A stretch of DNA of 64,000 nt from Kudoa neothunni (GCA_964304625.1 OZ199838.1:14448261-14512260); one strand, 5' to 3'; positions 28,609-54,548 are shown, numbered from the stretch's first letter. The notes: generated by a model from the sequence alone, not told the origin. Numbers and translations are program-made.

Positions 28609-31600
28609 ATGGAAAATTCTTTTGAGGAATTATGGAGTTCAGAATCTGTCAACAAACTTGAACGGGCAGCTACAGATGACGTCACTTTGGAAGAAAGTGA
28701 ATCCATCGAATCTTACAATTCGGAAGAATATTGTCGAATGATTGCAAAAAATCTTGATAATAGTGAATATTACGAAAAAGAAACCAACAGAAGAAGAAAG
28801 ATTGCATTAGATATGCTGAAGCGTTTAAATATTGAAAATCTAAATCGTACTCAGGCAGATAAATTGTTGGCGTCAGTGAAAAGCACATCGTTAAAAATTC
28901 AAATATTTGTCAAAGTTGTATCCACAACCAAAGTATGAGTGTATCGCTAGTCATTATGCTACGTGATTGGGGGCAGTTTTATAGATTGTTGTTGTTACTT
29001 GTATTGCTGTTACATTTGAATGTTACCATTAAAAAGACTATGTTTGAGTATTTGCACATCGCCTATGCCGAAAGGGTAAATACGTGCATATGTTAATGTG
29101 ATCAAATGCTTTTAGATACAACTATCGATTATTCTAATATTTTATGTGATGGATTGTACTGTGAAAATCATACGATACGGTTTCATGACTAGAGAACATT
29201 CATTCTTCAAAACATTCATAAACTATTTTGAGTTGATATCCATAGCTTGCATGTATAAATATAGATTGGATCGGCTTATTAAATTTTCTTAATTACTTCT
29301 TTAGTATGGCTATTCTACATATTCAGCATACTGATAGTAGAAAATTCTGGTTTCCTTATTTGTACTCTCTGAATATACTTGGGCTGTTGACCATATTGGA
29401 TTTCTCCCCGGGTATATTGACCAGATTGGAGTAACTTAATGTTTGTGTAAACATGAGAAAATATGTAGGCTCCGAGAAAGTTTTGAAGATGTTTAAAGTT
29501 GTCGTTATAAATTGTGTTCCTAAATTGTTGCTACTGTTTCCTTTCTGGCTTGTATTGGCTATTCATATTCAATATTTTGATAGAATCATCAATCACTTGA
29601 AAATTGGCGCCAAGGCGGCACCACCTCCTAAAAACGTAATTTTAAGAACACTACATTCACAATAGATTTCCCTACGACAGAATAAATTGACGCTAAAAAT
29701 AATTTATAATCTCATTTTCTTCATGAGAAAATATAATTATATTCATAACAAGTTTCCAATATAATTAATCTTCTTGTGGTAATTTTTTCTTTCACATTAA
29801 ACTAAGTTTTTCTTCTCATAAAGTTAAAATAATTAAAACATCTACATTTTAGATAACTATTACCTACTTGTAGATAATTCTTTTAATACTGGAAGGAAAA
29901 AATACGATACTAATGATAAAAATTACTTAACAAGGATTAAATATATCATAATTATTACAGCATTAACTAGATTCATTATTATACATAGTAAATTGTATAG
30001 AAAATTTTATTTCTTTGACAATTTATTATTTTTATCAATAAATGAAATAGAAATTCTGCATATTTATTTATCATTAAAAATTCTAGTAATACAAAGCTGG
30101 ACTCATTAATACTACAAACAATATAAAAAACTATTTGTTAAATAATATTGACTCAACAAGAATAATTTCTTAATAAATATATAATAAAATAATAAGAATT
30201 TATGTGTTAATGCCAACGAAAAAACCCCTTTACGTGTATGATAAGTGTATAACGACAAAAATTGCCTGCAAATTTAAGATCATAAATAAATTTATCAAAA
30301 TTGAAAGTATTCACTTTGCATTTCGACTTCGTTTGGTAAATGAATAGAAATAATTGATTTCTATTTATTAGAACAAATGTGTAATATCTCTTCGATATTT
30401 CGAATGTGAATTATTAATCAGTGTATACTTAGGAGAATTAATAAAAATTTTCTTCGTAAATAGGTGGTTTTTTCTAATTCACATGACGCAATGAATAGTT
30501 GTATGGCTGTATCCCATAAAAAATTAATAACTTTAGACTACCGCTGGCAAGAATCAAACAGCAGCAGCAAAAAAGACTGCGACAACATCTGGATTTGTGT
30601 CGATTCCCTCTTTGACTCAGTCTAACTTTTTCTACCATATCTATGCTGTGTTTATTTTTACTCACGCTCGTGATTCTGGAGAGTTATATCACATGGTGAA
30701 TAACTGAGATCGCCTTCGCTAAATTTATCCTATGTGTAGATGTTGAATGGCACCAATGTAAACATACCTTATTTGATATTTTTGAATTTGCTCGGTTGGC
30801 TGGTTGTTAAAAACGTGGTGCTTGGATATATTTTCGGTAGCATATCACAGTATACGGATTATTTTTGAGTTTTGAGAGTTATACTGGGATTTAGTGTGTC
30901 CACAATGGAATCAATCTATAATTCCATACGAAATGCTACGCTAGAAAAATTGAGAATCGAGAAAAAACTTACCTCAATTCTGTATTTTGATCGTACGAAT
31001 ATAACTGTTCTAGAAGTGGAAAAATATAAAGATGAAATCAGGGCTTTTTGGAGTAATTTGACAGTCGTCCTCATTCGATACGTTCGATATAACTCCAAGT
31101 ATTTGATAACTTTTCAATAATTCATTTTTATAAATCTCAAAGAAATCTTATTAATTTAAGAAGAAAATACAAAAATATTATCCACTTCATGAAAAACTAT
31201 TTCTCAAGTTTGTGGTATATCTATATAAATTCAGTAATTGTGCTAGTATACACAGTTGTCATGTTTTCTTATGATGCTGACCATGTACCGATATTTTTCA
31301 CCATTCAAAGTAGACCTTTTTGTCGTTAATCCGTCTTTATACATATCTGCATTAATAAAATAAGATTACTTTGAGTTAATGATCGAAGTGTATTTTATCA
31401 CGGAATTGATGGTAAAGTGGTTAACATTTGGGAAAGAATTTGCGTACAATAAAAACCTCCAAGAATTCGAAATTATTGTACGTTTAATTGATATTTTACA
31501 TAATGAATCTACACATTTAGATAACTATTCTATCCCTGTATGATATATACCTTCTGTTTGCGTATAATTACACGTATTCCTTCACCATTCTGAGAATTAT

Positions 31601-34600
31601 ATCTCTTTCGAAGTTGATATTCCATAGAAAGTATTTATAAGTTCAAAAATATACAATCGTTGCTTTAACCTTCTAAATAAAATAGGGTAGATTTCTACCC
31701 TAAATGAATTTAGCCAACAATATTATAGTGTATAAACGGAATATAACTCCTCACAACTTTTTTTAATCTCTTATCTTTATAAAAACTTTCAGAAAAATGA
31801 GTTGAAATTTTTTTTGACATATATAAAAAAAGTTAATGTAAAAACACCTTCCGAATAAAATTAATTAAAATATTGATACATGTGATTTTTAAAAATTTAC
31901 GGAAATTCGATCGAGCAAATAATGAATAAATAACGAAACACTATACATGCGAAGCCAGTACGCACGCGCCGCGTAGATATAATCAAGTTGTTCTCTCCAG
32001 AATACAGCGATAACTCCTCATTCTCTCATTATTTTTATACCAGTTATTCAAAACACGATTACTTTCCATCAGATTGCTTATTTCTACGTTATAGTGAACA
32101 TTAAAAAACAAATGATATAATTATTCATTAATTTGACAATTTTTGTGTTTTAGAAAGAGTTTATAAACATACATGATAACTTGTTTGTGAGTTACGCATT
32201 ATTTTCCATCATTTTGTGTTTTTTACGCAATGTTACACTACTTAGTTTAAAATAAGAAAAATTAATTGGCAGCTGTTATAAAACTTGAATTAAACGTTAA
32301 CTCTAAACAACCGCAGAAATACACCTATAAATACAAGCATACTCCATAGAAATGTAACAACGTTAATGTGTGCGCGTGCATATATTGAATATAACTTTAA
32401 TAATTGATCATTTATTCAAAATTTACTCGAGGAATTTTCCTCATATTTTGTCAGTCAATGCTGAATTTTATTTGGAGGATGTAAATTTTTCAGCTACATA
32501 GAAGGTTAAAATTGATTTTCGATGACAAATATATTATTTCAATCAACTTTTAAGTTATAGTAAAATTCTAAACAACTATTAATAGTTTAATCACTGACTA
32601 TGTAAGCCAAGGGAAAAAGAAATGTCCCTGAGATAAAAAGTAGGACAATTGACGTAGGCTTTGAGTCATTATATTTTTGATCAACTCATAATACATTAAC
32701 TTAAAATATTTCTGATAAATTCAAAGGAATAAGGCTCAGAAGGTATTGACTAATGCTCCCAAAATTTAACCCTTTAAAGTCGCTATGACATGGACAATAT
32801 GGCGAAGTGGCGTTAGGTCAAGATCGCATACTGTGAGATTGTCAGTTCGAAGTCTAGTCCGCGCGTTCCTGTACTCCTAATCCGAAATTAAGTAGAGAGG
32901 CTACAGTAATCGCAGGAATCTACGATTTATCATGGTCGGGCTTTTAGTTGGGAGGGGAGCCTGTAGGAAGCGTTGATCTTCGGAACCTATAAACGCCGGG
33001 GTACAGGGACGAAATAAAACCCAGTAGGGATTTCCCGTAGAGTCGACGCCTGCATTCAGGTGACTTTCCTAGACCAATTTTGGGTTAGTCCAGGGTATGG
33101 TTGTGGTGGTTGCTCCGAAACGAGTATGTTTAGTGGGTTAAAATTCAACACTACCGCATAAATATAAGTCGCCTTAATGTGAAGCTGCGGTGCCTGTGCC
33201 TAATGCGTAAATAGAGAGGGCCTAACCAGCCCTAACTTCACAACTTAACAAGTTGCGCCAGGGGTTTGACTTTGTAAGCAAAACGAAAAATCTAAAGTAG
33301 CTATAAGCTCGAAATTGTCCAATCTCAGAAGGGATTCCAATGAGTCTCAAAAAATTATAGGCCTTGAACATTTTAGCCCTAATATTGCAGAATCTGTGGA
33401 TATTGAATCCAATAAATAAATCCAAAATTCGGTCCACGATGATTATATCTCATTGAGAATTTTGATATTGTCATTTGTTAATTTATTCCTATTTATTCAA
33501 GACATAAGGCGAAAGGAAAACTAAAATATAGCAAAATAGTAAAAACTGATAGTAGTCCGTATGAAACCAACATTTTTCTATAGCATATAAAAATTAAAAT
33601 TAAGTTCTATTAATATTTTGTTTCAATTTGAAATTCACCCAACACATTGAAAGTTTCGACTTGAAATTTATTAACGGCAGTCAACGCGAATCTCACGAAT
33701 TTTCACGAACCAGGTCCAAGGAAATTAATAATTATACTAACTACGATTTTATAGGGTGATTTTCGAATAAAAATAATAAATAATTCGAATATTAATTTTA
33801 AATAATTTTTAGAATAAACTAATCGAATAAAAATCGGGAATCAATTTGATAGGAAGATTTTCTGAAGATAAAATTTTACCTCTAAGATTAAAAAAAGTTC
33901 AATTACATTAATAAAAGCAGCTGAAACCTCAAGGAATACCAACACATAAAAAAGCGATGATAATTTTAATTATGATTTAGGGTCAGTTTAAACCCCAAAA
34001 TCTTTAAAATGATTATGACAAATACCCAACTTAAATAAACTAATTTAACATGTTTTTCCATATTGTAGTCCTTTTTTATGATATAAAATCCATTTAAATC
34101 AGCATAAAACTAAAATAATTAATAACATTTCAAATATTTGAATATATTAAAATTATAGAGGCAAAAAAAAGTTGATGGTGGATTTGAACGGCTGCAAGGA
34201 AGCATGTGTTTCAGTTATACGTCATCTTGTTTGGTTGTTAGTATTGAGCTTGGGGTTAACTATTTTGGGAATGGCACTATTTGGATTATTGTATTTATCC
34301 AATTAGAAATATTTTCAAAATTTGGCAAATTTATAGAACCAACAGTGTACATTGGACACCATTTCCACGTTTGTTTGAAAAATTTGATTTGAGTTTCACC
34401 ATTATCTATTCAGTAATGATTTATTCACCGCGTCTTTATTCGTATATTGATTTGGAAAGTTATGGTACCATTAACAACAACAACAATAATAATAATAATA
34501 ATTTATTATATGTCGTTTTTTAATAAATGATAATCGATCTAGTTTGTGATTAGTAATTACTGGTGCAAAGGCGTTATGACGTCGGTTTACGGCTGTTAAG

Positions 34601-37600
34601 AGTTTAATGAAAGGTTTCTTTTTCTTGGGTGTTTATTTTTTCCTCTACGGTAGATATAAGATTTTTTATTTTCATATTTTAATTAGCTTTGTAGTATTTT
34701 TCAACAGCTACATCACTTGTATGATGTCTTTTTGTATTAATGATGATCAAAAAACGACTCTCCATGGGCAGTTCAAAGTAAGGAACTACACAATTTTATA
34801 GGCTAACAAATTATAATCAATTTAAAGAAAAGAAAATTTAATTCTAGCAAATGTATGAATTTAGATTTTTTCGGGGTATTTGCATGTTTTATGGTTATTT
34901 TTATGTTTGTTATATAGTTTAAAATTATAAGGATGAAAATTTGTTTAGAGACTCCTAGAATGTATTAAAAAAAGCGAGAAAAGAAAAACGTGATTATTTA
35001 AGAATACTTTAATTTCTAAAGTTGAATTTAGTTAAAAAGAGGCATCGCATGAGAGAAGATGATGCTTCTAGCTCTGTCAGTTCTGCTTCATCTGAACACA
35101 TCCCAAAGTAATGAAAAAAAATTAATTTTTCTAAGAAAAAACATAGAAAAAGAAAAAAAATTATTACCATCTACAATTCGTGGATCTACCGAATAGCTTC
35201 AACGGCTTTTATATTGTCGGCGATGGTGTTTTCAAATATTTGAAACCGAAAAATATATTAACAATAAAAGTTAAAAGTGAGTTAGAGATAACAAATAATT
35301 TGATAAATATATTTATATAGACGTTGTTAGTGTTTGAGATAATTTTCAACTTCTTGGTTATTTTTGATTGTCTAATAAATGTAACTTGAATAAATAATAT
35401 CTAATTATTTATCGAGTGTTATTATTTAAAGATTTATGTCAATGGTATGATTTCGAACAAAGCACCGACACTGGGAAAATATGAGAATATTATTCTACTG
35501 TTGGCGGATTCAGCGGTTCTGTTATCTAATTTGGTTTTGATGTAATGTTATGGAGACATTATATATTTAATATAGTTTAGATCATTATATAAAAAAACAA
35601 TCAATCAAATAATATATCCAATTTTGGTTATAAAATTTTCGATTGTATATGCGGACTAGCCATTTTCAGCAAATTCAAGATATTTGCAGTAGAATTAAAC
35701 AATTATTAATTCATCGCTTCATTTTTTTTATTTTCGATTTAGATCGCCTTTAGAAAATATAAAAACTGCGTTAAAAACAAACGCTATGCGCTTCTTTTAT
35801 ATGTTTTGATTATGATTGGCTATACTTATATCAATATGAAGTCGTTTAATGTAGAGATTATTGTGTATCACGAATTTCTATAATCAGTAAATTAACAGCA
35901 CCTACCAAAATTGTGTAATGATCCTATTTTTAACAACGGAAAAAACTGGTAAAATACACTATAAATTTATTGATAACAAATATGAACGCGAAACCATTGG
36001 TATACATCTTTAGGTTGTTGTAAAGGAAAATTTTACACTCTAAAGGCAGATTCCTTCGACAAAATAAAAGTAATAATTGAATATCTATTTTTTTAAATCA
36101 TCCATTTTTGATTATAGCTAAAGGATCGAGCGGTTTATTACAGTGGAAATGTTCCATTCAATCCCAACAAAAACATCCTCCATTCGTTTGTTTATGTTTT
36201 ATTTCTACCATTCAACGTTTTCACGTACAAATATTCTAAACATTAAATTATTATCTATTTTAAAAATAATATTAATTAGTGTTTATGACAAATTCAACTA
36301 TCTCTACAATTCGGAAAACAATGCCAATATTCTCTATTTAATATTTTGCATCGCCGAATACACCTTCATTGGTGTTTATGCTACAGGAATATTTTATTCA
36401 ATTTTTATTTCCTACAAAGATGAATTCAATTTTTGTAGTTACCTTACAGATAATCAGGTCATTTTTTATCTAAATAATTATATATTATATTGAATTTGTT
36501 ATATTAATTATATTATAACATATTTGTGTTTTTACAGTACACTTTATTTCAAAATATTATCACCAAAAAATTCTCCAAGCGTCAACCGTATTCCGTGCCT
36601 AAGGACCCCGTCTTTCTACTAGCTTTTACCATATGGAAATCAAACATATGCAAATACACACTACAAGCGATTGTAGTCGTGATCAACACTCTAATATATG
36701 TTAAAGTATTTGACTTATGCTTACTTTTATAAGTTTCGTTTTAGATTATTGTTGCCTCAAATATTGCCTATATTCAATTGGCAAATTATATTCTTATTGT
36801 ATTTCACACTATACTACAAAGCTTGATTTTGAATTTTTCGTTACCAACTGTAACATCACCTTATTATTTCGAAATATATAACCATGTTCCAGTGGAGTCA
36901 ATTATGGAAACAAAAAACAATTCATATAATAAATCTGCTTCTTGCGGTTTGTGGAACTGTGAAGTCGGTACAAAACTTGGACCTGGTAATACAAAATTCT
37001 AAGCTATCTAATCAATATCGGAATAATTCATATTTATTTCGGTAGTATCAACGTTACGACGATCTCTTCTTTATAGTCGTTGATTTTATCATTGTAATGA
37101 CTTATACGGTCTATTTGGTGGATGTCCTGGACAACTTCTACTTTGGTCTCTTTCTTAAAAATTCATTTCAAGTATCAATTTAACTTTTACAAATATATGA
37201 CAGCAATGGTGCGTTATTTTTAAAATAGGGGTTCATTGTGGCTTTAACTTATGCATTGTATATCTATTACACTTTTATTCTATATGGAATGATGGTAACC
37301 AACCTCAGTTATACATAGTTACATATGTTTCTGTTATAATAGTGGTTTTCTAATGTGGCAATTGTTGATGATCATAATAATCTGTCAGATTTAAATTTTC
37401 GAACGATTGAAGACACCATTAATGTAATTATGAGGTAGATATTAATGATAATATAATTTCGCATGTGTAAATTAATAAATAATTACTTGATATACGAAAT
37501 TTAGTTTCTCAGCCGGAAGTTATTGGCTTACCTTTCAACGAACCATCTACAATCAATTCTCATGCAGCAACTATCGCGCCAACTGCGGAACACCATTTTT

Positions 37601-37980
37601 CTATGTTTACTTTATATTGTTTGTGGCTGTATTTTTCTATTTAGTATGACTTTATTTCAACAAATTAAGGAAAACTAACTATTAAATACACGCTTATTCA
37701 GGTACCATTGCTCATATATAAAGAATTTGTAGACGGATACAAACTCACCTATGGCACCAACTATTCTTGTGGTGTGTATCATGTGGTACAGCTAAATAAA
37801 GTTTGGTCACGATATGACACTCTCAACACGTAATTAGTTGGGCCTTTTCATTTTCCGCTTTTATCACAAAAATGAACAAATAGCGGCTATGTCAATGTAT
37901 CCGATGTCCCTCAACTAATGAGAGATGTATCATCTACATTCGGTCTTGGCCACAACACTGCAAATTGGACCATCATGAAA
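28609..37980 (+). CDS. Highly divergent four-domain voltage-gated calcium channel alpha-1 (Cav1/Cav2-derived) like protein; 3' end unresolved
   Basis: Hand-spliced exons give Cav-type segments in the expected order: DI S2-S3 (DCTVKIIRYGF..FKTFINYFELI), DI S6 (PYLIFLNLLGWLVVKNVVLG), DII S2 (YFITELMVKWLTFG), DII S5 (LTILGMALFG), DIII S6 end (CSYLTDNQ vs CELDKNQ), DIV P-S6 (NFRTIEDTI.., CGTPFFYVYFILF) and the proximal C-tail (GVYHVVQLNKVWSRYDTLN-GYVNVSDVPQLMRDVSSTFGLG). Two single-nt indels are needed (about 34583 and 35591). Confidence 0.85.
31665..32509. mobile_element. piggyBac-type non-autonomous element, copy B, in an intron of the channel gene
   Basis: TTAA-CCTTCTA ... TAGAAGG-TTAA. Colinear with 22134-23030 except for a ~55 bp deletion near the right end. 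Confidence 0.9.
32790..33270 (+). mobile_element. Putative tRNA-headed SINE-like or retro-derived element (GC-rich island in an intron)
   Basis: A-box-like TGGCGAAGTGG (about 32800) and B-box-like AGTTCGAAGTC (about 32844) at tRNA-like spacing, followed by ~400 bp much more GC-rich than the flanks. Confidence 0.45.
34473..34503. repeat. Compound (AAC)n(AAT)n microsatellite, intronic
   Basis: aacaacaacaacaataataataataataat read directly. Confidence 0.9.
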
Positions 37981-38065
37981 GTATGCAATTTTATAGATTG
38001 GGTTTCCAACGATCTTCACTTATTACTCTTCCTTAATTAATTTGATCCCATTAGTCAAATCATTA

Positions 38066-41286: not shown

Positions 41287-44200
41287 TCATTCGGCTTTAG
41301 GTAATTTTTGGTTGCTATTGAATTCGATATCTTTGGTATTGTTAACTCGATGGGTAACATTTTTGGGAATATTTACGGTCATAAAAGCGATCGCCAAGCA
41401 TGAAAACAATCCTACGTGTCCATAGAAATAGACACTTTTCCACACTTTTATCACTGGACCAGCTTGTAAAAGACAGAATCCAATCACCGTATAATCTATG
41501 AGTCGACTGAGCAAAAACCAGCACATGAATTTAAGTAATAGACAGGTGGTGGCATTCAATTCCTTTAGATGAGTGTTGCAAAAATATATCAATCGGCCTT
41601 CAAGTGATAACAAGCTTATAGCAGTACCAAAAGTGAGGTAGTGTCCCGGGTGTATTCCATGCCATAGGGCGCTTACTATAAATGTGGCTAATCGTCTAAA
41701 TAAATAAATTGATTGAAAATATTCAAGTTTATTTTATTAATTATTTTAATATTTAACACGTCATTTATATTTTGAAACAGATTTTTATTTATAAAGAAAA
41801 AAATTAATTAATAATATAATGTTGCGTCATTATTGGATTGATATCATGTTTTAGAATGTATTAGTTCCACTCTACAATTTTCAGGAACTTAAAACTTCGA
41901 AATTATATACAAGTATTTTTTATATCTTGCGTAATCCTGGAGTTTTTTAGTCTAAATATCCATAAAGAAAATTACTAAAAAACACAAAATTAAATCAAAA
42001 AATATTTTTGGCATTAATGAGATTAATTTTTCTTTTTTTAATAAATTAATAAATATCTCCATTTAGTTTAGAAAGATATTCCATAAAATTTGCATGCAAT
42101 CAAATCATTAGATAATGATTTAACGAGTATTTTACCAACATTTTATTTAAAAATTATTATGAATAATCAATTTCAATTTTCTGATAAAAAAAATAATTCC
42201 TACACAGTATACAGACAATATTTGTCGAAAACATGCACAACAAAAACCACACCTTCGCATAAGCGAGTAATACAATTAATATCTGGTATTTCTTAAGATA
42301 CCAATACTCAGAGTCATTAAACAAATTATTATAGAATTGAAATATATTTTAACCCCCACACATTCTCACTAGCTAATTTTATTAGATACTTATAATTAAA
42401 ATTTTCCCCAACGTGCGTGAAAATATTTGTCACTGTATAAAAAATTAATTCTTATAAATACCGTTAAATAAATTAAATCCATATGGAAACGCTTTATTTC
42501 ATACCAAAACTAATTTTATGTTGATGAATCATTAATCCAGTCTAAATAGAACAATACTCAAATTATTTTATTTATTAAAATGATACAGAAAGACAGGAAA
42601 ACTTTAAAATCGCAAGTTTTACAATTAAATTAATCACTTTGCTTGTTGGAACATAATTCTCTGTAAAATGATAAATTATATTTGTATCTGATGGCAGAAC
42701 TCTTAAAAAGACAACACACGAGGCAGCTTTTCATCAAATATATGGTCCGGAGACTTTTACAATACTTTGTGAAATTTTTAACAATACAAAAATTTATGTG
42801 AGAACAATTGTTGACATAAAGAGCACACATATAGCACGCGTAACGATTATTTTTTAATCTCAATAAATTTTACTATATACTCGTTGTTATCAATTTTTTA
42901 AGGAATCAGATCATTTCTTACAAATAAAACGCGCGCATAACTTACACTTTGATAACAAAAGCGATATATCAATAGTCAAATAATGAAATTTCAACAAATG
43001 AATAAGCACGCGCAAACAAAATTTATGCATAACCACAAATTTCTACCTAAATAATCTAGTTTAATCTATAATATTTTCAGCGTACATAAAAGTTAGAAAG
43101 TATTCGACTTTTAGAGGCTTAATTTAAACGCGGGAATTGTTTATTTGATGAATAAAAACTCTATAATCAGCAATAATGGGACCATGAACTCCATTAGTTC
43201 ACAACAACGTTTAAAACTATTGCTAATATTCCCATTATGTATACAAACAAGTCGTGGTAGCTTGAAAAACTACTATAAAATGATTAGAATTTAAACAGTA
43301 CAAGAATCAAAATCACATAAACACTTAGTGAAGGGGTTCTCAACGGGTTTTTTCAAATTTACCCCCATAACTTGGAATCCGAATTCATATTTACTTTAAG
43401 GCTTTATACTGGTTTAATTATGGCAGAAGTTATTTGAGAGGTAAATTCTGATCCTAAAGGCGTCTACGCTTGCATAATGACAATTTTTAGCCCCATCGAC
43501 TCTTTCTTACTCACAAGCTGTCTACAGATTTAATTTTCTAGATTTTGCTAAATTAAATTGTTTCTACCTCAATCCTTTGCTCTCCAGGCCATACATTATT
43601 AAAAATAGTCCAAACTAACGACACTTAAGTATTAATATTATTTGTCTACATCACTAAAAAATAAACGAACTATATAAGGATGAGACCGATTATAGTTTTA
43701 TAATTAATTGTTAAATATTTATTCCTAAAAACATTTTAAGCACTTCTGTCTAATCCTTATTGAGTTCAATAACTCTAAATAATAGAATTCATTAGAAATG
43801 CTAAAGTGCGTTAAAAATCTTTAATGAAAAAATTTCTCCTGTAATTTAAATTTTACCCCTAGTTGAGAACCCCTGATTTAATGGGTTAAGTTCATGTCGA
43901 TATCTCAAAGTAAAGATTCTTCCTTAAACGGACGGCTTCACAATTGATATTTAAATAAAACCCTCATTTAGAAGAAACTGGTTACCGCCATATGATCGAT
44001 AATTCCATATTCCTCTCAAAATTTTTTGAAAATTTATAGAAGAATTGACGGAAATTGCAGTTGCGTATTAAAATTAATTAAAATCAGATTAGTTTTAGAG
44101 TCGTTTTATATTTAACACACAAATCAAAAAACTTTGAATTATTTATTTGTCATTTTCAAGAAAGATTGGAATGTTGTGCACTTGGTCGCGATTTGAGGTT

Positions 44201-45548
44201 GGTTTTTAACTTTCATTAAAATATTATTAAGATTTATTTTAAAGATAAAATTAACTGAAAAAGTCGAGAAAGTATCTACCCATGGGACTTTCTTTTGAAT
44301 GATAACCCCCTGTATATGTTGTGAGCCAACCAACTTTGAACGGTGATATTCCAATGTCGCACCATATTTCCGTAAATGTATCCAAATTCCATGTCGTATA
44401 CGCTAATATTGTTTATTGTCGTAAATCTAAAAAGAATAAAATAATTTGTAACAAATATAGCTTTGTACGAAATATCTTGAGGTCGAGTCACTTTTTTCCA
44501 CAATGGAGCAGGATCAACCGAAGGTCCAATAAGTGTTTTGGGTCTCGATTCAACTGGATAAGCTCCCATTCCCAAGCCTTTGCATGTCCATTTGGCAAAT
44601 ATAAATGCAACATAAAGTCGATATTTGAGAACAGTAGCGCACACAGTTATCCACCACACTTTCTTCAAAAAACTGTCCTGATAAAGAAACTGATCTGTGG
44701 TAAGATAAGTGAATTTGACGTATGATTTGGCAGTGAGAGCCGCCGTCCCTAAATACACTACCACCAACAAATCTTCCATGATAATGGACGAAATGGAGGG
44801 AAGAAATTCTATAATTTGAATTCCATCTTCGTTAAAAATTCTAAAATAAAAATTTAGTTTCTAATGTAAAAAAATAATTCAAACATACTTATTCATATGA
44901 AGCATATCTTTGTAGGTGGGATACGAAATACATGGACCGACAACCATGCCACAATAACAAAGATAATAGGATAATTCATCATACAATGAAACTATCTGAT
45001 GTATTGAAAGATTGGGATTGTTCCGTCGATTATATTCACCATTGATCCAAAATGCAAAGCCAACCAACTAAAATATAACACATTAATCCACTGAGATTTT
45101 ATGCAGATTATCTACCTTGAGAATCAAAAATAACACAAGCAAATCACCAAGAAATGAAATTCGAACTTTCTCCATCAAAATCATAATACGCAGGATGGTC
45201 GCCATTGTGAAAATTATGGTTAATGAATACATGTGGCATCGTCTAAAAGTTGATAATGATTAAATATAAAAGAAAACAACCTAACTTATAATAATATAGT
45301 TACTTTGGTCCTGTTATTCGTATAGTTAAAGTGTTTGTCAATTTCATCAACATTGTCGCATAAATATCAGTCATATTTCCAATACAAAAGCCATAAGTTG
45401 CAACCCCCAGCAAAGTGCAATATATTTGTTTTGTGTTAGGGTTGTTCACTTTTCTTATTAGTGCACCAAATACAACCAATGCGAATACATATGGAGGAAT
45501 AAAAAAATCCTCAAAAAGTTTATTAGAGAGGTTGAATTTATTTGTCAT
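41287..45548 (-). CDS. MBOAT7: Membrane-bound O-acyltransferase, MBOAT7/LPIAT1-like, multi-exon
   Basis: YCGMVVGP, KWTCKGLGMGAYPVESRPKTLIGPS, VRHWNITVQSWLAHNIY (44276-44779) and SALWHGIHPGHYLTF with the catalytic His (about 41630-41675). A ~2.5 kb intron separates the last two exons. Confidence 0.88.
43331..43875. mobile_element. hAT-type non-autonomous element in the MBOAT intron
   Basis: TIRs aggggttctcaac / gttgagaacccctg with an imperfect 8-bp TSD (acttagtg / atttaatg). Interior is similar to about 3150-3480. Confidence 0.75.
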
Positions 45549-45869
45549 AAGGATAGATAAGTTGATATAGTGTATTCAGGCTCCAATTTCTATGTAGATG
45601 ACCAAAATTTAAAATTTACTAGATTTATATTAATTAAAATTCGATTACTAAAAATATAGGAAGTGGCTTTGATGCAAAAATTATAACTTGTATCTTTATC
45701 CTCCTTATTCCCGATCTTTAGCGACATCAATTCGAGCAATTTAAAGGGACTACGATTGTTGTTTGTGTACTAATTTGGTATAGGTTATTGGGATGAATTT
45801 TGTTTTGATTTAATTAGAAATCGTTAATACCAACAACATAGATGTAGTCTGTAATGATGAATGACCTTG

Positions 45870-46110: not shown

Positions 46111-49100
46111 CCCTTTCGTGACAAATTTTTCTTTTTTTTTGAATTTTTTCATGCGTTTATAAACTCTAATTATTCCCATTTTATTTTTATGTATTGAATT
46201 AAAGTTTTTGGTAATTATAAAGCCTGTGACACCTGAAAAACACTCCTTTTCGCATCTTTTTAGTTGATAACTTTTTTACGATTCTTATTAATAAAATAAA
46301 CAAATATCGAAAGCAAAAATTCAGCCCTAGGTAATAACCTCTAAATTTTAATCAAATTCTACTTGAGCAAAATCGTCCCTGCGTGTTACCTCCTTTTTGT
46401 TTACTAAAGCTCGCCAGTTTCATTATTTGTCACATATTTTAACATATTCGTTACATTAAATCATTTAAGTTATTTTTTTACATTAAGAAATAAACAGATT
46501 TGCTAATTTCACGTTTTTTAAACGCGTGCTAGTCCAAACTGGAGTCGTTAAGTTTTACAGGCGATGATGACTCTTATTTACTCATTAATGATTACGAAAA
46601 GTTCTTCCATGTATTTGTTGCTAAGGGTTATCTTCACAGTGCTCCAACTTGCTGTAGCAATTGCAAGGATTTTGGTTGCTTCATCCTTAGAAAGCGAAAA
46701 TTAAATGTTGTCAGACCGATAACTGAACAGCTAGCATATGACAGAAATAACGTCGATTATTCTATCACCTATTATGTAAAAAAGTAATATTTTATCTCAA
46801 GTCGCCGCTTTTAAAAACAATAGACGTAAAACTACTTCCCCCCCCCCCCCCCCCCCCCAAAATGGAACATTTTTTTCAAACTCTCATATACGTGGTCCGT
46901 CCCAGAATCTAACACTGACAAAAAATTTAAAATATTATATCGCTGGCGTATGGATGAAACTATTTTAAATACAAACAAAAATGATTAGTTAAGTATGCCT
47001 GCAGTTTCAGCGTGGTTCAAAAAACCCGATAACTCTGCAAATCACCCCTCGAGAACAGAACAAACTTGATGGGAAGATTTCATTGTAGAAATTCATGAAT
47101 TCTTCCTCCATGGAAAAAGGAAAAATAAAGAATTTTTAGAGTCAGGTACTAAATCTCGAATTTGATATAATTATTTAGATAACGTATTTCTTTTACTTAA
47201 TAGATGCGGAAGATGGAAGTGATAGCGATTATTTCCCCACAGAAGTTGAATTTTTTTGATGTATCCTTCGACAGCATTTTATGATGTCACTATTTTAATA
47301 AATAGTGTAAATAGATGCTGCACTAAGAAGAGGAAAATATGATGGAAGGGTTGATGATCCTTTGATTTTTGGATTGGCTCAGTGTAAACTTGACGGCATG
47401 GGAAAGAGGACTCTCGTAGAAGTGAGGTACTTCTATGTAGTGAAGTGGAATTCGGTGACACTTTTGCCCATCATCGAAAAAGAAATCCACAAAGGATCAA
47501 CCATATCCAGTGACGAATGGCACGTCTATAATGGTATACGTGAGCTTAGCTATGATTATGTTAAGGTCAACCACTTGAAAGGATACGTGCAGAATTGTGC
47601 CCATACAAATACTATCGAAGGATGCTGGGGAGGTTAAAAACAAAATTTTTTCGCATAAAATGGGGGGTATCATCCTCAAATCTTGAGGAATAACTTATTG
47701 AAGAAATGGTACCGATTTATCATGGCGAAGAAATAAATCCTCTCAATAACATTTTAAGATAATTTATCTTTGTTTTTGAAAATATTCATATTTTAGTCTT
47801 TTTTTTATGTTCAAAAAGTCGATGTTAACATAAATGGATAAATAAACTGTTCCAATAATGATAGGTTAGTTATTTAAGAATTTATTAGATAAATTAATAT
47901 TTACCACGCAACATTTTCTGAATTTTGATATAAAATAATTAAATGCTTGTGTACACTTAGAAATCTGCCAGCTGAATAATGTCATTAACAAATATCGCAG
48001 AAAATTTTTTATAGCGGAAGAATTTTTCTTTGGAAGTCATTAACATTAGAATTTTTGAAATCTGATAAGGATTACAGTGACTTATGGGGTCGTTCGTAAT
48101 ATCGCAATAAAACATAAATTAATAAGCTTTTTGAAAATTTAATTTTTACTATCTAAACTTTATTAAAAACGTAACATATTGCTTAAATTGGACTTTAGAA
48201 AACTTAAAATATCAACAGTTTTTATGCATTTAATGTGTCGTGCGCAATTATGGCTCGTGCGTCGGTAGCTAACAAAAAGAAATTACTAACTCTATCGATA
48301 AAATTAGAAATCATCAAACACTACGAAAAGATATCGAATAAACCAAACGCCAAATTGAAACGATGAAGGCCTTCGACGTAAAAGCAAGATCTACCTTGAA
48401 TACTATCCTAAACAATAAAGACAAGTTGCTTAAGCACTATAACGACGGTTCTGTTTCCAAACTAAGAAAAACTCTTAAGAAAGGAGAACATATAGATATC
48501 GATCATCAAGTGAAAGACTGGATAGAATTCATGAGAGCAAAAAATATAGAACTTTCTCAAGAAGTTATCATCAATAAAGCCAATGGAATTCTTGATGATG
48601 CCTCAAAAGAAACACCTTTGTCAATTGGCTGGTTTTATGGCTTTATAAAAAGATTTAATATCTCTCGTAGTACATTTTTCGGTGAATCGAAATGTGTAAA
48701 CAATATTGTCATCGAGGAATGGAAAACCAATTTGAGCGAAATCTTTAAGAGCTGGGAGGCCTAAGGATATTTTTAATACAGACGAAACAGGCTTGTATTA
48801 TCAGCAACGAAAAATTTATTAATATGTTTATGTGTTATATATCTTGCGTAGGTAGAGGATATGTATTCACTAACGAGGTAAATAAAAATGGGTGTAAACA
48901 ATCAAAAAAAAAGAATAACTGCTTTGTTTACCTGCTCTATGCTCGGAGAAAAATTAGACCCATTAATAATAGGTAAGTTTTCAAAGCCCCGTTGTTTTGG
49001 ATCAATTAAAAAGCTGCCATTGGATTATGAAGCAAACACTAACGCTTGGATGACAGAGAAAATATTTTCCCAATTCCTCATTAGGTGGAACAAGAAATTA

Positions 49101-50800
49101 ATTATGTCAACAAGGAAAATTTTGCTTTTTCTTGACAACTGCCCCTCACACCCTAATTTGAACCTTTCCAATATTACTTTATGTTTCTTCCCATTTAATG
49201 CTACTAGCGTTTTGCAACCTCTTGACTAAGGGATAACCAACAATGTTAAAGTAATTTATAAGAAACATTTAATGGAGTCTCTTATACAGAGATTGGAAGA
49301 TGGATCGACCAAATGCGAATTACCCACCATTTTGGAAGCGATGTTTCTGTTGAAGAATTCATGGGATCATGTAAAAACCGAAACAATTGTAAATTGTTTT
49401 AGAAAGTCATTTTCCCCATGCCACGAAGAATTAGAAACTCTCACAGAAAATGAAAATCCAACAATCGAATTAAAAGAAATGATGGAAGAAGTCAATATAA
49501 TCACTATAAATCCAGAAGTTTGTGTTGCTGATGAAGTGGATAGCGATAATACTAGTATTCTTTCACATCATGATAGGATAGAAGCAGGGTCTGATAATGG
49601 TTCTATTTAAGCTGTTCTCGTTTCTGATAAGGATATGTTTAAATATTTGGCCTGTATAAGGAGATATTTTAAAACCAAAAGCCCAGAAATGTTAAAGCAA
49701 ATAACAAAATTCGACGATCTAATTTTAGGAACGACTGCATTACAAATTACTTTAAAAGTAACCGTAGTTGATTACGCTTGTTAACGAAGATATTACGTAT
49801 TATTTTTAATTTTTGTTTATTTCGCATGCGCAAAGCTATGTGTGATGCGTAATTATGGCTCGTGCGTAATGACTTTGAATTCCCTTTTGATTACGCACGA
49901 CCCATAAGTCCTTGTATTTTGCGAGAAATTCAAAAAATTAAATAATTCATATATGGCACTTGAATAATTCTATATTCACCTTCTCGTAAAAATATTATTT
50001 TTGCGTAAAATCAGGTATTGAGTGCTATTAACAAATGTTTTTTTAACATTTTGGATTTTTTACATTTAATTGAATAGAGTACTCCAAAAAATTGTATATG
50101 ATACTTTATCATTTTTATTGGATTTATCTACGTAACCTTAAAATCGTCTATTTTCTATTTTGATAACTGCTGTATTATATTGATTATTTTATGACAAACA
50201 TAATAGTTTATAATTTTTTTTGGAAGATAATGGACATAATAAAATGTCAACTTTCAAACGACTTCAGCCATACCATTGTATTCACCGAATATAAATTTAC
50301 CAACAAAATTTATAAACTAAAACTCTTGTTTAACATAATAAATAATAGTCAAATTTAAAGTTTACTTATTTTAATTTGAATAGAATGGTGTTTCCAGTAT
50401 CTAAAATATGGCATCATTATATAGAACACTTAAATTCATTTGTTGGTCAAATAATTATTTAAAAAAATAATTTAAGTTATTTTAAATAACGAACGCATTA
50501 AAATATGTGACAAACATTGAAACTGGCAAGTTTTTGTAAACGAAACAGAGATTACACTTAGGATCTATTTTGCTCGGGGCGGGTTAGATCAAAATATAGA
50601 AATTAATGTTTGTGACCACATTCTTCCATTACTTATTTATTTTATTAAGGAGAATCGTGTAGAAATTGACGATAAAAGAGACGTACGAAGGGTGTCTTTC
50701 AAGTATCACATGTTTCATTATTACTATCGGAGAACTTCTTAAAAATTAATGTTATGAAAATTAAAAAATGCAAAAAAATATTTCAAAACAAACGAATATT
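46107..50800 (+). mobile_element. Long-TIR element with a degraded Merlin/ISXO2 (IS1595-like) DDE transposase
   Basis: ~400 bp imperfect inverted repeats (46110-46500 vs 50440-50800). Coding remnants IVEIHEFFLHGKRK, IFGL.., TLLPIIEKEIHKGSTISSDEW.., VNH..AHTNTIEGCW, plus an upstream Cys cluster at about 46650. Confidence 0.82.
48075..49914 (+). mobile_element. Tigger/pogo (CENP-B-like) transposon, inactivated, nested in the Merlin element
   Basis: TA-flanked TIRs CAGTGACTTATGGGGTCGTTCGTAAT / ATTACGCACGACCCATAAGTCCTTG. HTH region (SIGWFYGFIKRF) and DDD motifs (FNTDETGL, ILLFLDNCPSH, SVLQPLD), with stops. Confidence 0.93.
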
Positions 50801-50868: not shown

Positions 50869-53024
50869 TGTCACGTGATTATGGTTCTCTCGAAAGGCCC
50901 CATGCTAAAATAATTTATTCTAAATACAATTTATTTGACTCCCCATGTCTTTGTAATAATCAATTATTTAGAACCTTGATATGAGGAAGGAAAATATATC
51001 CCCAAAACTTTGATTGTAAACAAGGTTTCACAATATTTCTTAACTTAAAACATTTACTCATATGATAAATTCATGTTGTAAAGCACTAAACACATGATAA
51101 AAATTTTATTTTTTATCTTATTGAATTATCTAGGAGCTTTTGTAGTGCCATATTTACTGAATTTTTTCTGTGGATATTTCAAAGAATTCAAACTCTATTT
51201 TCCTATTAATAAAGTTAATTTCTAATATATTAATTATTTTGGTTAAGTATAAAAATATTTCGGAATTAAAAAGCTACCGACACGTAAATCCATCACATAA
51301 ATTAATTTTATTATTACATTGACTTCATTGTTTCACACTTTATAATAAAACTTATTGTAAGTTCAAGAACTGAAAAATTCACCAACACTTTTCAAGGTGA
51401 CATTAAACCAGGCGAAAAAACCTCATATAATGTGCAATTTAATAAACAATTTTTATTTTGGGATTTAAATTAAATACAAATAATTATTCGAAAAATCAAT
51501 ATCTATAAATTTAAGGTCATAATTATTATTCCGCAATAGCTCAATAAAATATACTGAATATAAAATAAGAAAATAATAATCGGTAAATATTGAAATCTAA
51601 AACGACCTTTCTTATTAAGCTTCATCAACCTAGTTTCTTTTTCGGAATGCAATAAATGCACCTATTCCTCCAATCACAACAATTATTGCCACAACCGCTA
51701 TGATGATTCTAAAATTTATTATTTAAATAAATCATATTTCCAACATAATACATAGTGTTTTTGCTTGACCTAGAAAATAATATAATAAGTTTTCTGACTA
51801 TTATAATATTTACGTTGATCTACTTCCCGCTTCTCCTACATTTTAAATCAATATAGCTGATCGATAGGAGAATTTTTACCTTTCTTAATTTCTTCGGCTC
51901 CAAATACTGTTGCATCTTCACTGTGATAAATCGTCAAGTGATAATCATTTAAATCCTCCACATTTTCGATGGTGAAACTTTCACAATTTGGCAGTGAGTT
52001 GCAATCGCCGACTGAATTGCCAGTACATTTTTTGACCGTTGGTCTTGCAGGATCATTTGAATTTACCAATGTCCACTTACATTTGGATCCTTTGGATTTA
52101 CCCTCGGGAAGGGTGCTGGTGACTTTTAGTGTTGTACCCTCACGATTAATGACAACAGTTATTTTTTTCGATGGTTCAGTTGGGGTCACCGGTAATGGTT
52201 CTAAATAAATTTTAATATTTTTATTATCATGAGAAAATATTATTATTGATTATATCAATAGATAAAAATAATTTCTGTTAACAACTGATAAAGTTTACTT
52301 GGTTCTATCGTAATTACTGACTCTTTTGATCTACCAACAGCTGTAACCAATATTTTATATTCCTTGTTTGCATAAAAACCATCACTGAATACGATATTTT
52401 CACATAATGGCACTTCAGTACAATATTCAGCAGGTGCTGGATTTGCGAGTGGTTGCTGTTTGTCTGTACCTGTTCTAGCAATAATAATTCCGTCATTTTC
52501 ACCTAGCATTATTGACAATGCTGATTTGGGTGCATTAACCGGGCAAGAAAAAACAGTCTCCCATTGACCTCCCCTTTTCTCTTTAATCTGATAATGACAT
52601 TGCGCTTCAGCGTACGGTGTTGACAATGTGCCTTTGATTCTGTAACCCTTGTCTAATGGTTCTTTAGCAAGCGCAAGATTAGAAAATACTATTTTAAATA
52701 TTACTGAAAACATTCATATAATAACCATATTTACTCGTTTTAAGATTGGAAAATGTAGTAGAACCATACTCGGAATATGCTACAACCTTAACGTCGTACG
52801 CTGTATTAGGCTCAAGGTCAACAACAGTTTTGGAATCTTTGCACAAGCCTCTGCAGGGTACGCTATCCAAACATGCAGCTTCTACAAACAGATTTTTCCC
52901 TGTAGCACTAACATAGAAGTCACATACAGGCTCGGTTGATTCATTTCCAGGACTTCCATCTATTGCCTTTATTATGATAGACGTATCCCTCAGAGTTGGC
53001 TGGGCCGAATTAAATAATTTTTCC
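50869..53024. repeat. Segmental direct duplication, unit 1 (partner 61835-64000, offset about 10.97 kb)
   Basis: Near-identical sequence from tgtcacgtgattatg onward. Scattered substitutions and small indels, mostly in the 3' flank of the gene. Confidence 0.95.
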
Positions 53025-54548
53025 CCATTTTTTTCTTTATTATGTTAAAAATAGGATAATTAAATTTTTATTACCTGTTTCAATATATAGGTATTCTTTA
53101 AAATCAGCGTAGTTGTTTATATTTCTCGGAGAAATTTGAAACATGAGTGATTTTCCTTCAGGTAAGCTTTGTATGGTGGCCACTGAACTGCAAAGATTGG
53201 AGCAAGTCTGTCCACTTGAACATTGTGCATCATTATTTTGGCCGTCCTTAGGCGTGCCTGCGGCATAATATTTAATGTTGCATTGATCAAAGTTTACTCT
53301 AGTTCCAGTCGATGGCGCCAATAACGGCAGATTTATTTTAACCCCAGTACTTGTAATAGAAGAGATCAGTGCTTCTTCCTCTCCACTGGGTTCGATTATG
53401 GCTATAACAATTTCATAAGAGAAGGAATTTATTTATTTACCATATTTTTTATAGGTATATCCCTGTATTGGCCTTTGATCACCTGCTACTAAATTATGAT
53501 GTCTCCTTTGAATCAATATTTCAACGATGGGTTTAGTTTGTTCGAGTGTGAGCTCCACCTCGTCACAAGGGGCATAGCAAGGTTTGTTTATGCCGCCGCA
53601 ATTTGAGGAGTAAACGGCTGGATTTGGACTTAGGCTATCGATTCCGTCTCTAATACTGAATAAGCATATTTCACTTGGAAATGAGTTGGTGAATTTAAGT
53701 TGATATTGTGTTTTTATCGCTTCAGATTTATACTTAACGTAGAACTGTGGCTTATAAATGTCTGTTTCCTCTCTCATATAATAATTGGGCAGATGGTAGT
53801 AGAATATGGGATAATCGGTGCATCTCACTTCAAAATATGGGATTTTGATGCCGTATTCAACCGATTTGGCGTAGGTGTCACTACTGCTATTGTAGGCGAA
53901 TCCACAATTATCCCCTGCAGGTACATTTTTGTATTTTATGCCTTTGTAATAAATAGGACATGCAACTGGTTTACACGTAACCGCACTCAGCATTAATTGA
54001 TCACCATTATGTGTCGACCCTGTAATAAATGGGTCAACCAACAACGCTAAATTTACCTTAATATATAACAAAGTTATTTAATCATACGTATTTGAAAACC
54101 AAAAACATTCCCACCCTTTTTATGAGAATTTTCTTTTACATCAGCTGGATCATCCCCATCCTTTATGTAAACATATTTCGACCTTGGGGAGAAATATAGA
54201 TAATCAAGATTATTGTCTTTTCCAGTACAGGATCGGACACACATACTATAAATACCACTTTCCTTATTTGCACATCCATCTATTTCATCATAGTCGTTTC
54301 CATTGGCGTTTTCTTTCATTATACGACATTTTTTTGTTCCTTCATACGCTAAACCCTTTAATTCAATGTTAACTTTAGCGGAACTTTCAAGAGGATCTTT
54401 CAACTGATAATAAACTTCTCTAGCAGCTTTTGAAGTATCTGTTGTAGAGTAAGAACATGTGACTAATTAACAATTAATTAAATCAACCATTATTTGAATT
54501 ACATGCAAGTATAATCAAAGGAATAAAGTTTTTGTTATTAAATTTCAT
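51630..54548 (-). CDS. Type I membrane surface protein with about 7 Cys-rich fibronectin type III-like modules, copy 1 (roughly 800 aa)
   Basis: Signal-peptide-like exon MKFNNKNFIPLIILA|FTCS. Module-sized phase-1 exons follow; one missed by the ORF track (about 52735-53035) reads ..VVDLEPNTAYDVKVVAYSEYG, an FN3 signature. Ends with TM IIIAVVAIIVVIGGIGAFIAF and tail RKRN*. Confidence 0.8.

What the first reader, a model, noticed from the sequence alone, without database searches (positions are those of the whole stretch)
29354..37130. Cav-derived four-domain channel whose S4 voltage sensors have lost their gating charges
Seen in sequence after manual splicing. DI S4 (29354-29411) is PYLYSLNILGLLTILDFSPG, aligning without gaps to the Cav1 pattern [20 protein letters not shown] with every basic position neutralised. 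DII S4 (31575-31630) SFTILRIISLSKLIF keeps 2 charges. DIII (35615-35688) YKIFDCICGLAIF keeps 1 in the core and has an Asp at an Arg position. DIV (37061-37130) FFIVVDFIIVMTYTVY vs FFRLFRVMRLVKLLSR keeps none and gains an Asp. Established: Cav1/Cav2 S4 helices carry Arg/Lys every third residue and these are very highly conserved. Inference: hydrophobic periodicity and splice sites are retained, so this looks like a maintained, voltage-independent Cav derivative (leak-like, ligand- or mechano-gated, or scaffolding), convergent with but more extreme than NALCN.
Basis: partly seen in the sequence, partly recalled or inferred. Interest (0 to 1): 0.85.

Follow-up and report, generated by a model that had tools for sequence, protein, structure and literature searches.

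The report
Degenerate calcium-channel-like gene in a parasite

Summary
A + strand gene (28609-38040) with about 20 short GT(A)..(T)AG introns encodes a very diverged four-domain channel-like protein. Six exons match a Cav1 reference colinearly (z 1.9-6.4). Cav1/2 is the closest family over Nav, NALCN, Cch1 and Cav3. Pfam sees only one sub-threshold Ion_trans hit.

- DI S4 (29305-29411): confirmed. It sits between S3 and S5, is flanked by 52- and 57-nt introns, and has no basic residue in the helix.
- DII S4 (31521-31630): keeps R and K. The next exon, across a 2.5-kb repeat-bearing intron, adds a Lys cluster.
- DIII peptide: its frame is closed by two upstream stops and has no acceptor. Canonical splicing reads another frame, and DIII is truncated.
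- DIV peptide: a real coding exon, but it lies after an S5-plus-turret exon and before S6, so it is pore-loop or S6-like. The likelier DIV S4 (36538-36705) has two Lys.
- The pore Glu ring is also lost (D / none / ? / S).

The genome has no canonical Cav: three diverged Cav-like loci plus a normal NALCN. Maintained derivative versus young pseudogene therefore stays open, and I favour the former (about 55:30). Other first-stage notes of this scan flagged two similar loci in this genome.

The parts
28609..28846 (+). Exon 1: ATG and acidic N-terminus
   Evidence: Part of a 121-aa ORF. Codon log-odds +13.5. Donor GTACTC at 28847 leads into a 104-nt intron.
28951..29075 (+). DI S1 exon
   Evidence: In-frame junctions on both sides. 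It is followed by a 40-nt GTAAAT..TTTAG intron.
29116..29252 (+). DI S2-S3 exon, the one statistically significant Ion_trans-like piece
   Evidence: Pfam PF00520 E 0.0028. Four-domain HMM E 1.5e-4. Maps to P0173 residues 112-150.
29305..29411 (+). DI S4 exon: a hydrophobic helix with no Arg/Lys and one Asp; R-K only in the S3-S4 loop
   Evidence: Flanked by 52- and 57-nt canonical introns. Log-odds +7.0. Ungapped alignment to P0173 residues 182-217.
29469..29635 (+). DI S4-S5 linker (contains KxxKxxK) and S5
   Evidence: Read. Log-odds +8.2.
30464..30622 (+). Candidate DI pore loop (..ITLDYRW: Asp at the filter position, Trp kept). This is an ORF; the exon ends were not set.
   Evidence: Read by eye only. 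Log-odds +8.5, but no significant alignment.
30740..30865 (+). DI S6 (ORF; exon ends not set)
   Evidence: Best local match is P0173 residues 319-357, just after the DI filter. z 3.1.
31093..31309 (+). DII S1 (the start is the ORF limit)
   Evidence: Donor GTAGAC at 31310 leads into a 55-nt intron.
31365..31477 (+). DII S2 and the start of S3
   Evidence: The S2 Glu and Lys are kept. Donor GTACGT leads into a 43-nt intron.
31521..31630 (+). DII end of S3 plus S4 (..FTILRIISLSKLIFHRK): R1 and K3 kept, R2 and K4 lost
   Evidence: Read.
31631..34158 (+). 2528-nt intron carrying a dispersed repeat of about 495 bp (about 32790-33285)
   Evidence: GTATTT..TTATAG boundaries that keep the frame. The repeat has more than 300 candidate copies at about 80% identity in the genome.
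34159..34290 (+). DII inner end of S4 (G-K-K-K), S4-S5 linker and S5 (..LGMALFG)
   Evidence: Best local match is P0173 residues 580-609. z 3.5-4.0.
34337..34520 (+). DII pore-loop region with no acidic filter residue and no Trp, then a poly-Asn run
   Evidence: Preceded by a 46-nt intron. Read. No significant alignment.
34580..34777 (+). DII S6 (ORF; donor GTAAGG at 34778)
   Evidence: Read.
35115..35541 (+). DIII S1-S3, in exons 35115-35225, 35321-35380 and 35432-35541
   Evidence: The 51-nt GTAACT..TAAAG intron gives an exact register with the Cav DIII S2-S3 sequence.
35593..35688 (+).
   Evidence: Stops at 35578 and 35590. No AG between 35593 and 35657. Log-odds 0.1.
35743..35850 (+). Basic stretch (..FRKYKNCVKNKR) plus the last hydrophobic segment of DIII. 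It resembles the end of DIII S6 and the start of the III-IV linker.
   Evidence: Restricted alignment to P0173 residues 1055-1079, p about 0.03. Log-odds only 0.6.
36118..36224 (+). End of the III-IV linker plus DIV S1
   Evidence: Matches P0173 residues 1076-1115, z 3.0. Log-odds is +4.3 in this frame against -9.2 in the overlapping long ORF frame.
36280..36457 (+). DIV S2-S3
   Evidence: Log-odds +8.8. The junctions are in frame.
36538..36705 (+). DIV S3-S4 loop (K-K-F-S-K-R) and the likelier DIV S4 (..VFLLAFTIWKSNICKYTLQAIVV.., two Lys)
   Evidence: Preceded by an 80-nt intron with a strong polypyrimidine acceptor. The assignment rests on segment order only, so it is an inference.
36745..36963 (+). 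DIV S5 plus a Cys/Asn-rich extracellular turret
   Evidence: Part of an 85-aa ORF with a hydrophilic, non-AT-biased second half.
37046..37171 (+).
   Evidence: Log-odds +9.2. Best match is P0173 residues 1343-1365, the ..MDNF region. It lies after the turret exon.
37513..37643 (+). DIV filter-like A-G-S-Y-W (Glu replaced by Ser) and S6 (CG..VYF..LFVAV)
   Evidence: Matches P0173 residues 1331-1350, z 3.7-4.3.
37702..38040 (+). C-terminal EF-hand-like region (exons 37702-37829 and 37884-38037) and the stop codon
   Evidence: 58- and 54-nt introns. CTD1 matches P0173 residues 1374-1389, z 6.4. The spacing of the YD...G..x..DV and G.G motifs equals that of Cav1.

Best explanation
The locus is a genuine protein-coding gene, derived from a high-voltage-activated (Cav1/2-type) four-domain channel. 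It sits in a small, AT-rich, fast-evolving genome that looks myxozoan.

What is shown:
- An exon chain with short canonical introns.
- Colinear residual homology to Cav1.
- A DI S4 helix without any basic residue.
- A DII S4 with only R1 and K3 in the core, plus a Lys cluster at its inner end.
- No RxxR array anywhere in the locus.
- Loss of the pore Glu ring.
- A shortened DIII.

What is inferred: the protein can no longer be a voltage-gated, Ca2+-selective channel. VSD-I is electrically silent, VSD-II at best weakly charged, and the filter cannot bind Ca2+ with high affinity. What survives is most likely a voltage-insensitive membrane protein, either a poorly selective leak or a non-conducting scaffold. 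It has been kept as an open reading frame under much relaxed constraint in an animal without neurons. It is one of three such diverged Cav-like genes in this genome.
For: Gene structure:
- Introns run 39-104 nt, plus one of 2528 nt holding a dispersed repeat. Most have GTA donors and TAG/CAG acceptors, and they link the homologous pieces in frame.
- The NALCN gene of the same genome has introns of the same size.
- Codon log-odds summed over the proposed exons is +122 in frame, against -7 and +20 out of frame.
- Two ORFs exceed 120 aa where about 0.4 are expected by chance.

Homology:
- DI S2-S3 has E 1.5e-4.
- Six exons score above nearly all shuffles (at most 3 of 60 reach them) and land in colinear positions on Cav1 reference P0173: 112, 319, 580, 1331 (two exons) and 1374.
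- Sum of median local scores: Cav1/2 335, Nav 296, NALCN 272, Cch1 272, Cav3 265.
- The NALCN orthologue lies elsewhere and keeps its S4 charges.

S4 readings.

Extreme divergence together with intact frames and splice sites argues for long evolution as a coding gene rather than neutral decay.
Against:
- Apart from one exon, profile scores are about zero, and a protein language model does not recognise the DIV S1-S3 piece.
- Much of my segment assignment in DIII and DIV rests on order and on reading by eye in AT-rich sequence, where every frame yields hydrophobic peptides.
- 111 in-frame splice routes exist across one 700-nt stretch.
- DIII lacks S4, S5 and pore-loop equivalents, and its second half has no coding signal. 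That fits decay.
Confidence: 0.55

Rival explanations
1. It is a young or ongoing pseudogene: a Cav paralogue released from selection in a neuron-less parasite. The S4 charges, filter glutamates and half of DIII have simply decayed, and the remaining open frames are what is left.
For: - It is the lowest-scoring of the four-domain loci in the genome: chain score 27 bits, against 41 to over 400 bits for the other three.
- DIII is truncated, and its second half has no coding signal in any frame.
- A homopolymer frameshift would be needed for one plausible reading.
- A second S6-like motif sits in a non-coding-looking frame at 37204-37293.
- A repeat is inserted inside the gene.
Against: - About 20 canonical short introns still join homologous pieces in frame.
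- In-frame codon usage clearly beats the other frames.
- ORFs of 121 and 123 aa survive in 29% G+C DNA.
- Divergence this deep under neutrality should have destroyed frames and splice sites.
- The repeat lies in an intron.
Confidence: 0.3
2. The voltage sensors are normal, but the hand-made gene model is wrong. Charged S4 helices would then be encoded by exons that were missed, or by alternative splicing.
For: Many in-frame routes are possible. A KxxKxxK triplet follows the DI helix, and a Lys cluster follows the DII helix.
Against: - No [RK]xx[RK]xx[RK] array in a hydrophobic context exists in any + frame between 28 and 39 kb.
- The DI and DII S4 exons are fixed between S3 and S5 by short canonical introns, with Cav-like spacing.
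Confidence: 0.05
3. There is no channel gene here. The resemblance is pattern-seeking in AT-rich DNA, whose random ORFs are rich in Phe, Ile, Leu, Tyr, Asn and Lys.
For: Pfam finds only one sub-threshold hit. PDB phmmer finds nothing. I found competing 'motif matches' in overlapping frames, for example at 36118-36279 and 37204-37315.
Against: - Six exons beat nearly all shuffles (at most 3 of 60 reach their scores), and their best matches are colinear with Cav1. I estimate the chance of that at about 1e-6.
- The splice and codon evidence also argues for a real gene.
Confidence: 0.05

Closest known systems
High-voltage-activated Ca2+ channel alpha-1 subunits (Cav1/Cav2); reference used here is P0173, a fish L-type alpha-1
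   Same: - Four-repeat layout.
- S2-S3 motifs.
- DI S6 (N..LG...G) and DII S5 (LGM.LFG).
- DIV S6 (CG..VYF..LFVAV).
- A C-terminal EF-hand-like stretch with identical motif spacing.
- Cav1/2 is the best-scoring family.
   Different: - DI S4 has 0 of 5 charges, and the DII core has 2 of 5.
- No Glu ring: D / none / not identifiable / S.
- DIII is about 165 residues instead of about 280.
- No IQ or GPHH domain was detected.
- No exon other than DI S2-S3 yields a notable profile score.
NALCN (sodium leak channel)
   Same: A four-domain channel with reduced S4 charge content, gated largely independently of voltage (my own knowledge).
   Different: - NALCN keeps several S4 charges and an EEKE/EKEE filter.
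- This genome has its own NALCN orthologue at C1:8.727-8.734 Mb, with R-containing S4s.
- The target scores lowest against NALCN-type references.
Nax (SCN7A), a Nav-derived voltage-insensitive channel (my own knowledge; not tested here)
   Same: A member of a voltage-gated four-domain family that lost S4 charges and voltage gating while staying expressed.
   Different: Nax keeps a functional pore and all 24 segments. Here the pore signature and part of DIII are lost too.
The two other diverged Cav-like loci of the same genome (C1:7.886-7.918 Mb and C1:10.366-10.373 Mb)
   Same: They share the genome and the short-intron architecture. Their S4 arrays are also reduced: DI keeps 2 R in one and K+R in the other. 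Both were flagged by other first-stage notes.
   Different: - They still score 26-64 bits with channel HMMs.
- One keeps R, R and K in DIV S4.
- They show no detectable similarity to the target beyond noise.

Membership tests
Voltage-gated four-domain channel superfamily (Ion_trans x4) | Pfam PF00520 match above the gathering score in each repeat | tested here: not met
   Only 29116-29289 hits, at 17.4 bits against a cut-off of 25. Ten further exons give no hit.
Voltage-gated four-domain channel superfamily (Ion_trans x4) | Four colinear repeats of S1-S6 | tested here: inconclusive
   DI, DII and DIV can be traced and are anchored by colinear matches. DIII has only S1-S3 plus one or two hydrophobic segments.
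Voltage-gated four-domain channel superfamily (Ion_trans x4) | S4 with Arg/Lys at every third position | tested here: not met
   DI has none. The DII core has R and K. No array occurs in any frame of the locus.
Cav1/Cav2 (HVA calcium channels) | Closest family by sequence | tested here: met
   Sum of median local scores over 8 exons: Cav1/2 335, Nav 296, NALCN 272, Cch1 272, Cav3 265. No tree was built because the joined model was left out.
Cav1/Cav2 (HVA calcium channels) | EEEE selectivity locus (T-x-E-x-W in each pore loop) | tested here: not met
   The candidate loops read TLD-YRW (DI), no acidic residue and no Trp (DII), not identifiable (DIII), and AGSYW (DIV). The loop assignments were made by eye.
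Cav1/Cav2 (HVA calcium channels) | C-terminal EF-hand / GPHH / IQ module | tested here: inconclusive
   The EF-hand-like stretch matches Cav1 residues 1374-1389 at z 6.4, with conserved motif spacing. PF16905 and PF08763 are not detected, and the ORF stops at 38038.
Cav1/Cav2 (HVA calcium channels) | AID (beta-subunit binding helix) in the I-II linker | not tested
   The exon boundaries of the I-II linker (30869-31117) were not resolved.
NALCN | Orthology to NALCN | tested here: not met
   The NALCN orthologue is at C1:8.727-8.734 Mb. Its best hits are Thelohanellus and Myxobolus NALCN. The target scores low against NALCN references.

The most novel reading that the evidence does not exclude
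Myxozoans keep a small family of Cav-derived four-domain proteins (three loci in this genome, and no canonical Cav). Their voltage sensors and Glu-ring filters would have been dismantled while the reading frames stayed under selection. That would make a natural lineage of voltage-sensor-dead Cav relatives, re-used for some non-electrical role such as a leak, a mechanically or ligand-driven Ca2+ entry route for polar-capsule discharge, or a scaffold, in an animal without neurons.
Probability: 0.2. Interest if true: 0.75.

Novelty: new variant of a known kind. Interest (0 to 1): 0.45.

Why it matters
If the gene is expressed, it would be an unusually complete natural experiment. It would show what remains of a Cav channel when an animal lineage gives up neurons and muscle: which modules (S6, the C-terminal EF-hand) are kept, and which (S4 charges, the Glu ring, part of repeat III) are dispensable. 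It would also give a testable case of a Cav scaffold without voltage sensing. If it is a pseudogene, it is only an example of gene decay in a reduced parasite genome.

Tried and rejected
- PDB phmmer with two exons: nothing.
- Own-genome search with two exons: only self-hits, so this is no recent paralogue. blastp of all window ORFs against the paralogue loci gave only transposon hits and noise.
- Family HMMs (Cav1, Cav3, Nav, NALCN) on window ORFs and on single exons: no discrimination, scores about 0.
- The search for homologous proteins with the 123-aa and 109-aa ORFs: nothing. Exact look-up of the N-terminal ORF: not on record.
- ESM Atlas features for the DIV S1-S3 piece: no usable hit.
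- Rfam on the window: nothing. No internal DNA duplication was found in the gene.
- Enumerating splice routes between DIV anchors gave 111 in-frame paths, so in-frame connectivity alone is not informative there.
- Rejected readings:
  - Frame-1 continuation of DII S3 (..VRLIDIL..), which is intronic.
  - The long ORF frame for DIV S1 (log-odds -9.2).
  - 37204-37293 as S6 (log-odds -5.4).
  - The KxxKxxK triplet as the DI S4, which breaks the topology.
- All searches were done exon by exon.


Full report
**Context.** The window is 24-37% G+C. It lies at C1:14448261-14512260 of a 40.3-Mb assembly in 4 contigs. The best-conserved channel gene of that genome is NALCN, at C1:8.727-8.734 Mb. Its nearest named relatives are the NALCN proteins of Thelohanellus kitauei and Myxobolus squamalis, at 32-34% identity, plus an unnamed Logan contig at 52%. 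I therefore take the organism to be a myxozoan or close to one. This is an inference from a single gene. The library papers I read say only that myxozoans evolve fast and have few ion channels. None describes Cav genes in them.

**Is there a gene?** Yes.
- On the + strand from 28609 to 38040 I could link the pieces that resemble channel segments through short introns. Their lengths are 39-104 nt, nearly all with GTA donors and TAG/CAG acceptors, and they keep the frame.
- The NALCN gene of the same genome has introns of 38-64 nt.
- The one long intron (31631-34158) holds a dispersed repeat of about 495 bp, with more than 300 candidate copies in the genome.
- Codon log-odds, trained on other genes of this genome, sum to +122 in the proposed frames and to -7 and +20 in the other two.
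- Two ORFs of 121 and 123 aa stand where about 0.4 of that length are expected by chance in 29% G+C DNA.

**Is it a Cav relative?** The signal is weak but real.
- Pfam gives one sub-threshold Ion_trans hit, on 29116-29289 (E 0.0028). A profile of 72 four-domain channels gives E 1.5e-4 for the same exon.
- All other exons score about zero with profiles.
- In pairwise local alignment against a fish L-type alpha-1 (P0173), with shuffles as control, six exons stand out, and their best matches are colinear:

| Exon | Match on P0173 | z |
|---|---|---|
| DI S2-S3 | 112-150 | 1.9 |
| DI S6 | 319-357 | 3.1 |
| DII S5 | 580-609 | 3.5 |
| 37204-37293 piece | 1331-1346 | 3.0 |
| DIV S6 | 1331-1350 | 3.7 |
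| C-terminal EF-hand region | 1374-1389 | 6.4 |

  (confirmed in restricted searches)
- Over eight exons the sum of median scores is highest for Cav1/2: 335, against Nav 296, NALCN 272, Cch1 272 and Cav3 265.
- No tree was built.

**S4 of repeat I: confirmed.** The exon 29305-29411 lies between the S2-S3 exon and the S4-S5 linker/S5 exon. From the end of S3 to the start of S5 there are 54 residues, against 55 in P0173. The hydrophobic helix has no Arg or Lys and one Asp. Anchored on the V-P at the start of S5, the five basic positions of Cav1 read Y, N, G, T, D. An R-K pair sits in the S3-S4 loop, and a K-x-x-K-x-x-K triplet sits in the linker. Taking that triplet as the S4 would leave an extra membrane helix and no linker, so I reject that reading.

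**S4 of repeat II: partly reduced.** A 43-nt GTACGT..TTTAG intron (31478-31520) joins S3 in frame to ..FTILRIISLSKLIFHRK. R1 and K3 are kept, while R2 and K4 are lost. The donor at 31631 joins in frame to 34159, which adds G-K-K-K before the linker and an S5 that matches Cav1 well (..LGMALFG, z 4.0). The inner end of this S4 is therefore basic. 'Two charges' holds only for the core.

- Its frame is closed by stops at 35578 and 35590, and no AG occurs between 35593 and 35657.
- It could be joined to the acceptor at 35575 only if the A7 run at 35591-35597 had one more A.
- The canonical route (GTAATG at 35542 to TTTAG at 35580, then GTATAT at 35645 to TTTAG at 35742) reads the same DNA in another frame.
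- Neither frame has a coding signal.
- The following exon resembles the end of S6 and the start of the III-IV linker (FR..KNC.KNKR).
- The whole repeat has about 165 residues instead of about 280. I could not identify an S4, an S5-turret or a pore loop in it.

**Repeat IV: real exon, wrong label.** The order along the DNA is:
1. S1 (36118-36224).
2. S2-S3 (36280-36457).
3. An exon with a basic loop and a hydrophobic helix carrying two Lys (36538-36705).
4. An exon with a long hydrophobic helix followed by about 50 hydrophilic residues with Cys and N-x-S sites (36745-36963).
6. A-G-S-Y-W and a Cav-like S6 (37513-37643).
7. The C-terminal region.

That is the canonical order S4, S5-turret, pore loop, S6. 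The detailed route here is open, because 111 in-frame paths exist.

**Other features.**
- The candidate filter positions read D (DI), none (DII), not identifiable (DIII) and S (DIV). These were read by eye.
- No RxxRxxR array exists in any + frame of the locus.

**The rest of the genome.**
- A canonical Cav1 query finds no canonical Cav.
- There are two other diverged Cav-like loci, at C1:7.886-7.918 Mb and C1:10.366-10.373 Mb, with partly reduced S4s but much higher profile scores. Other first-stage notes flagged both.
- The target is not detectably similar to them.

**Verdict.**
- The loss extends to the pore and to repeat III. This looks like general relaxation of channel function, not a specific conversion to voltage-independent gating.
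- Intact frames and splice sites alongside near-total sequence divergence favour a still-coding gene (about 55%) over a young pseudogene (about 30%).
- That could not be tested. No orthologue was found.

Noticed in passing
window 32790-33285 (inside the 2.5-kb intron): A dispersed repeat of about 495 bp, richer in G+C. It has more than 300 candidate copies at about 78-82% identity across at least three of the genome's four contigs (SINE- or MITE-like). Rfam gives no match.
   Followed up: partly
window 51851-54466 (-) and 62827-63999 (-): Two nearly identical copies, 10,976 bp apart, of a gene for a Cys-rich, apparently secreted protein. The 133-aa ORFs differ by one residue. This looks like a recent segmental duplication. 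The protein was not identified.
   Followed up: no
window 7556-7945 (-), 59406-59912 (+), 47311-49607 (+), 57417-58032 (+): Transposase fragments that look piggyBac-like and pogo/Tigger-like by eye. Related copies also lie near the other Cav-like locus (L002, L012).
   Followed up: no
window 41290-45575 (-): The downstream neighbour on the opposite strand looks like an MBOAT-type acyltransferase (..WHGIHPGHYLTF..). It could serve as a synteny anchor when looking for orthologues.
   Followed up: no
G000 C1:8,726,700-8,734,200 (L001 + L010): This is the NALCN orthologue. It is well conserved and keeps Arg-containing S4 helices, so the charge loss in the target is not simply a genome-wide artefact.
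   Followed up: partly
G000 C1:7,886,000-7,918,000 and C1:10,366,000-10,373,300 (L002, L012; L011, L005): Two further diverged Cav-like genes. DI S4 keeps only 2 basic residues in each. One keeps R, R and K in DIV S4 and a Cav-like III-IV linker. No canonical Cav was found in the genome.
   Followed up: partly
window 37204-37293 and 37584-37643: Two stretches in different frames both match the start of Cav DIV S6 (CG..VY..). The first has negative coding log-odds. No DNA-level repeat links them, and their relationship is unexplained.
   Followed up: partly
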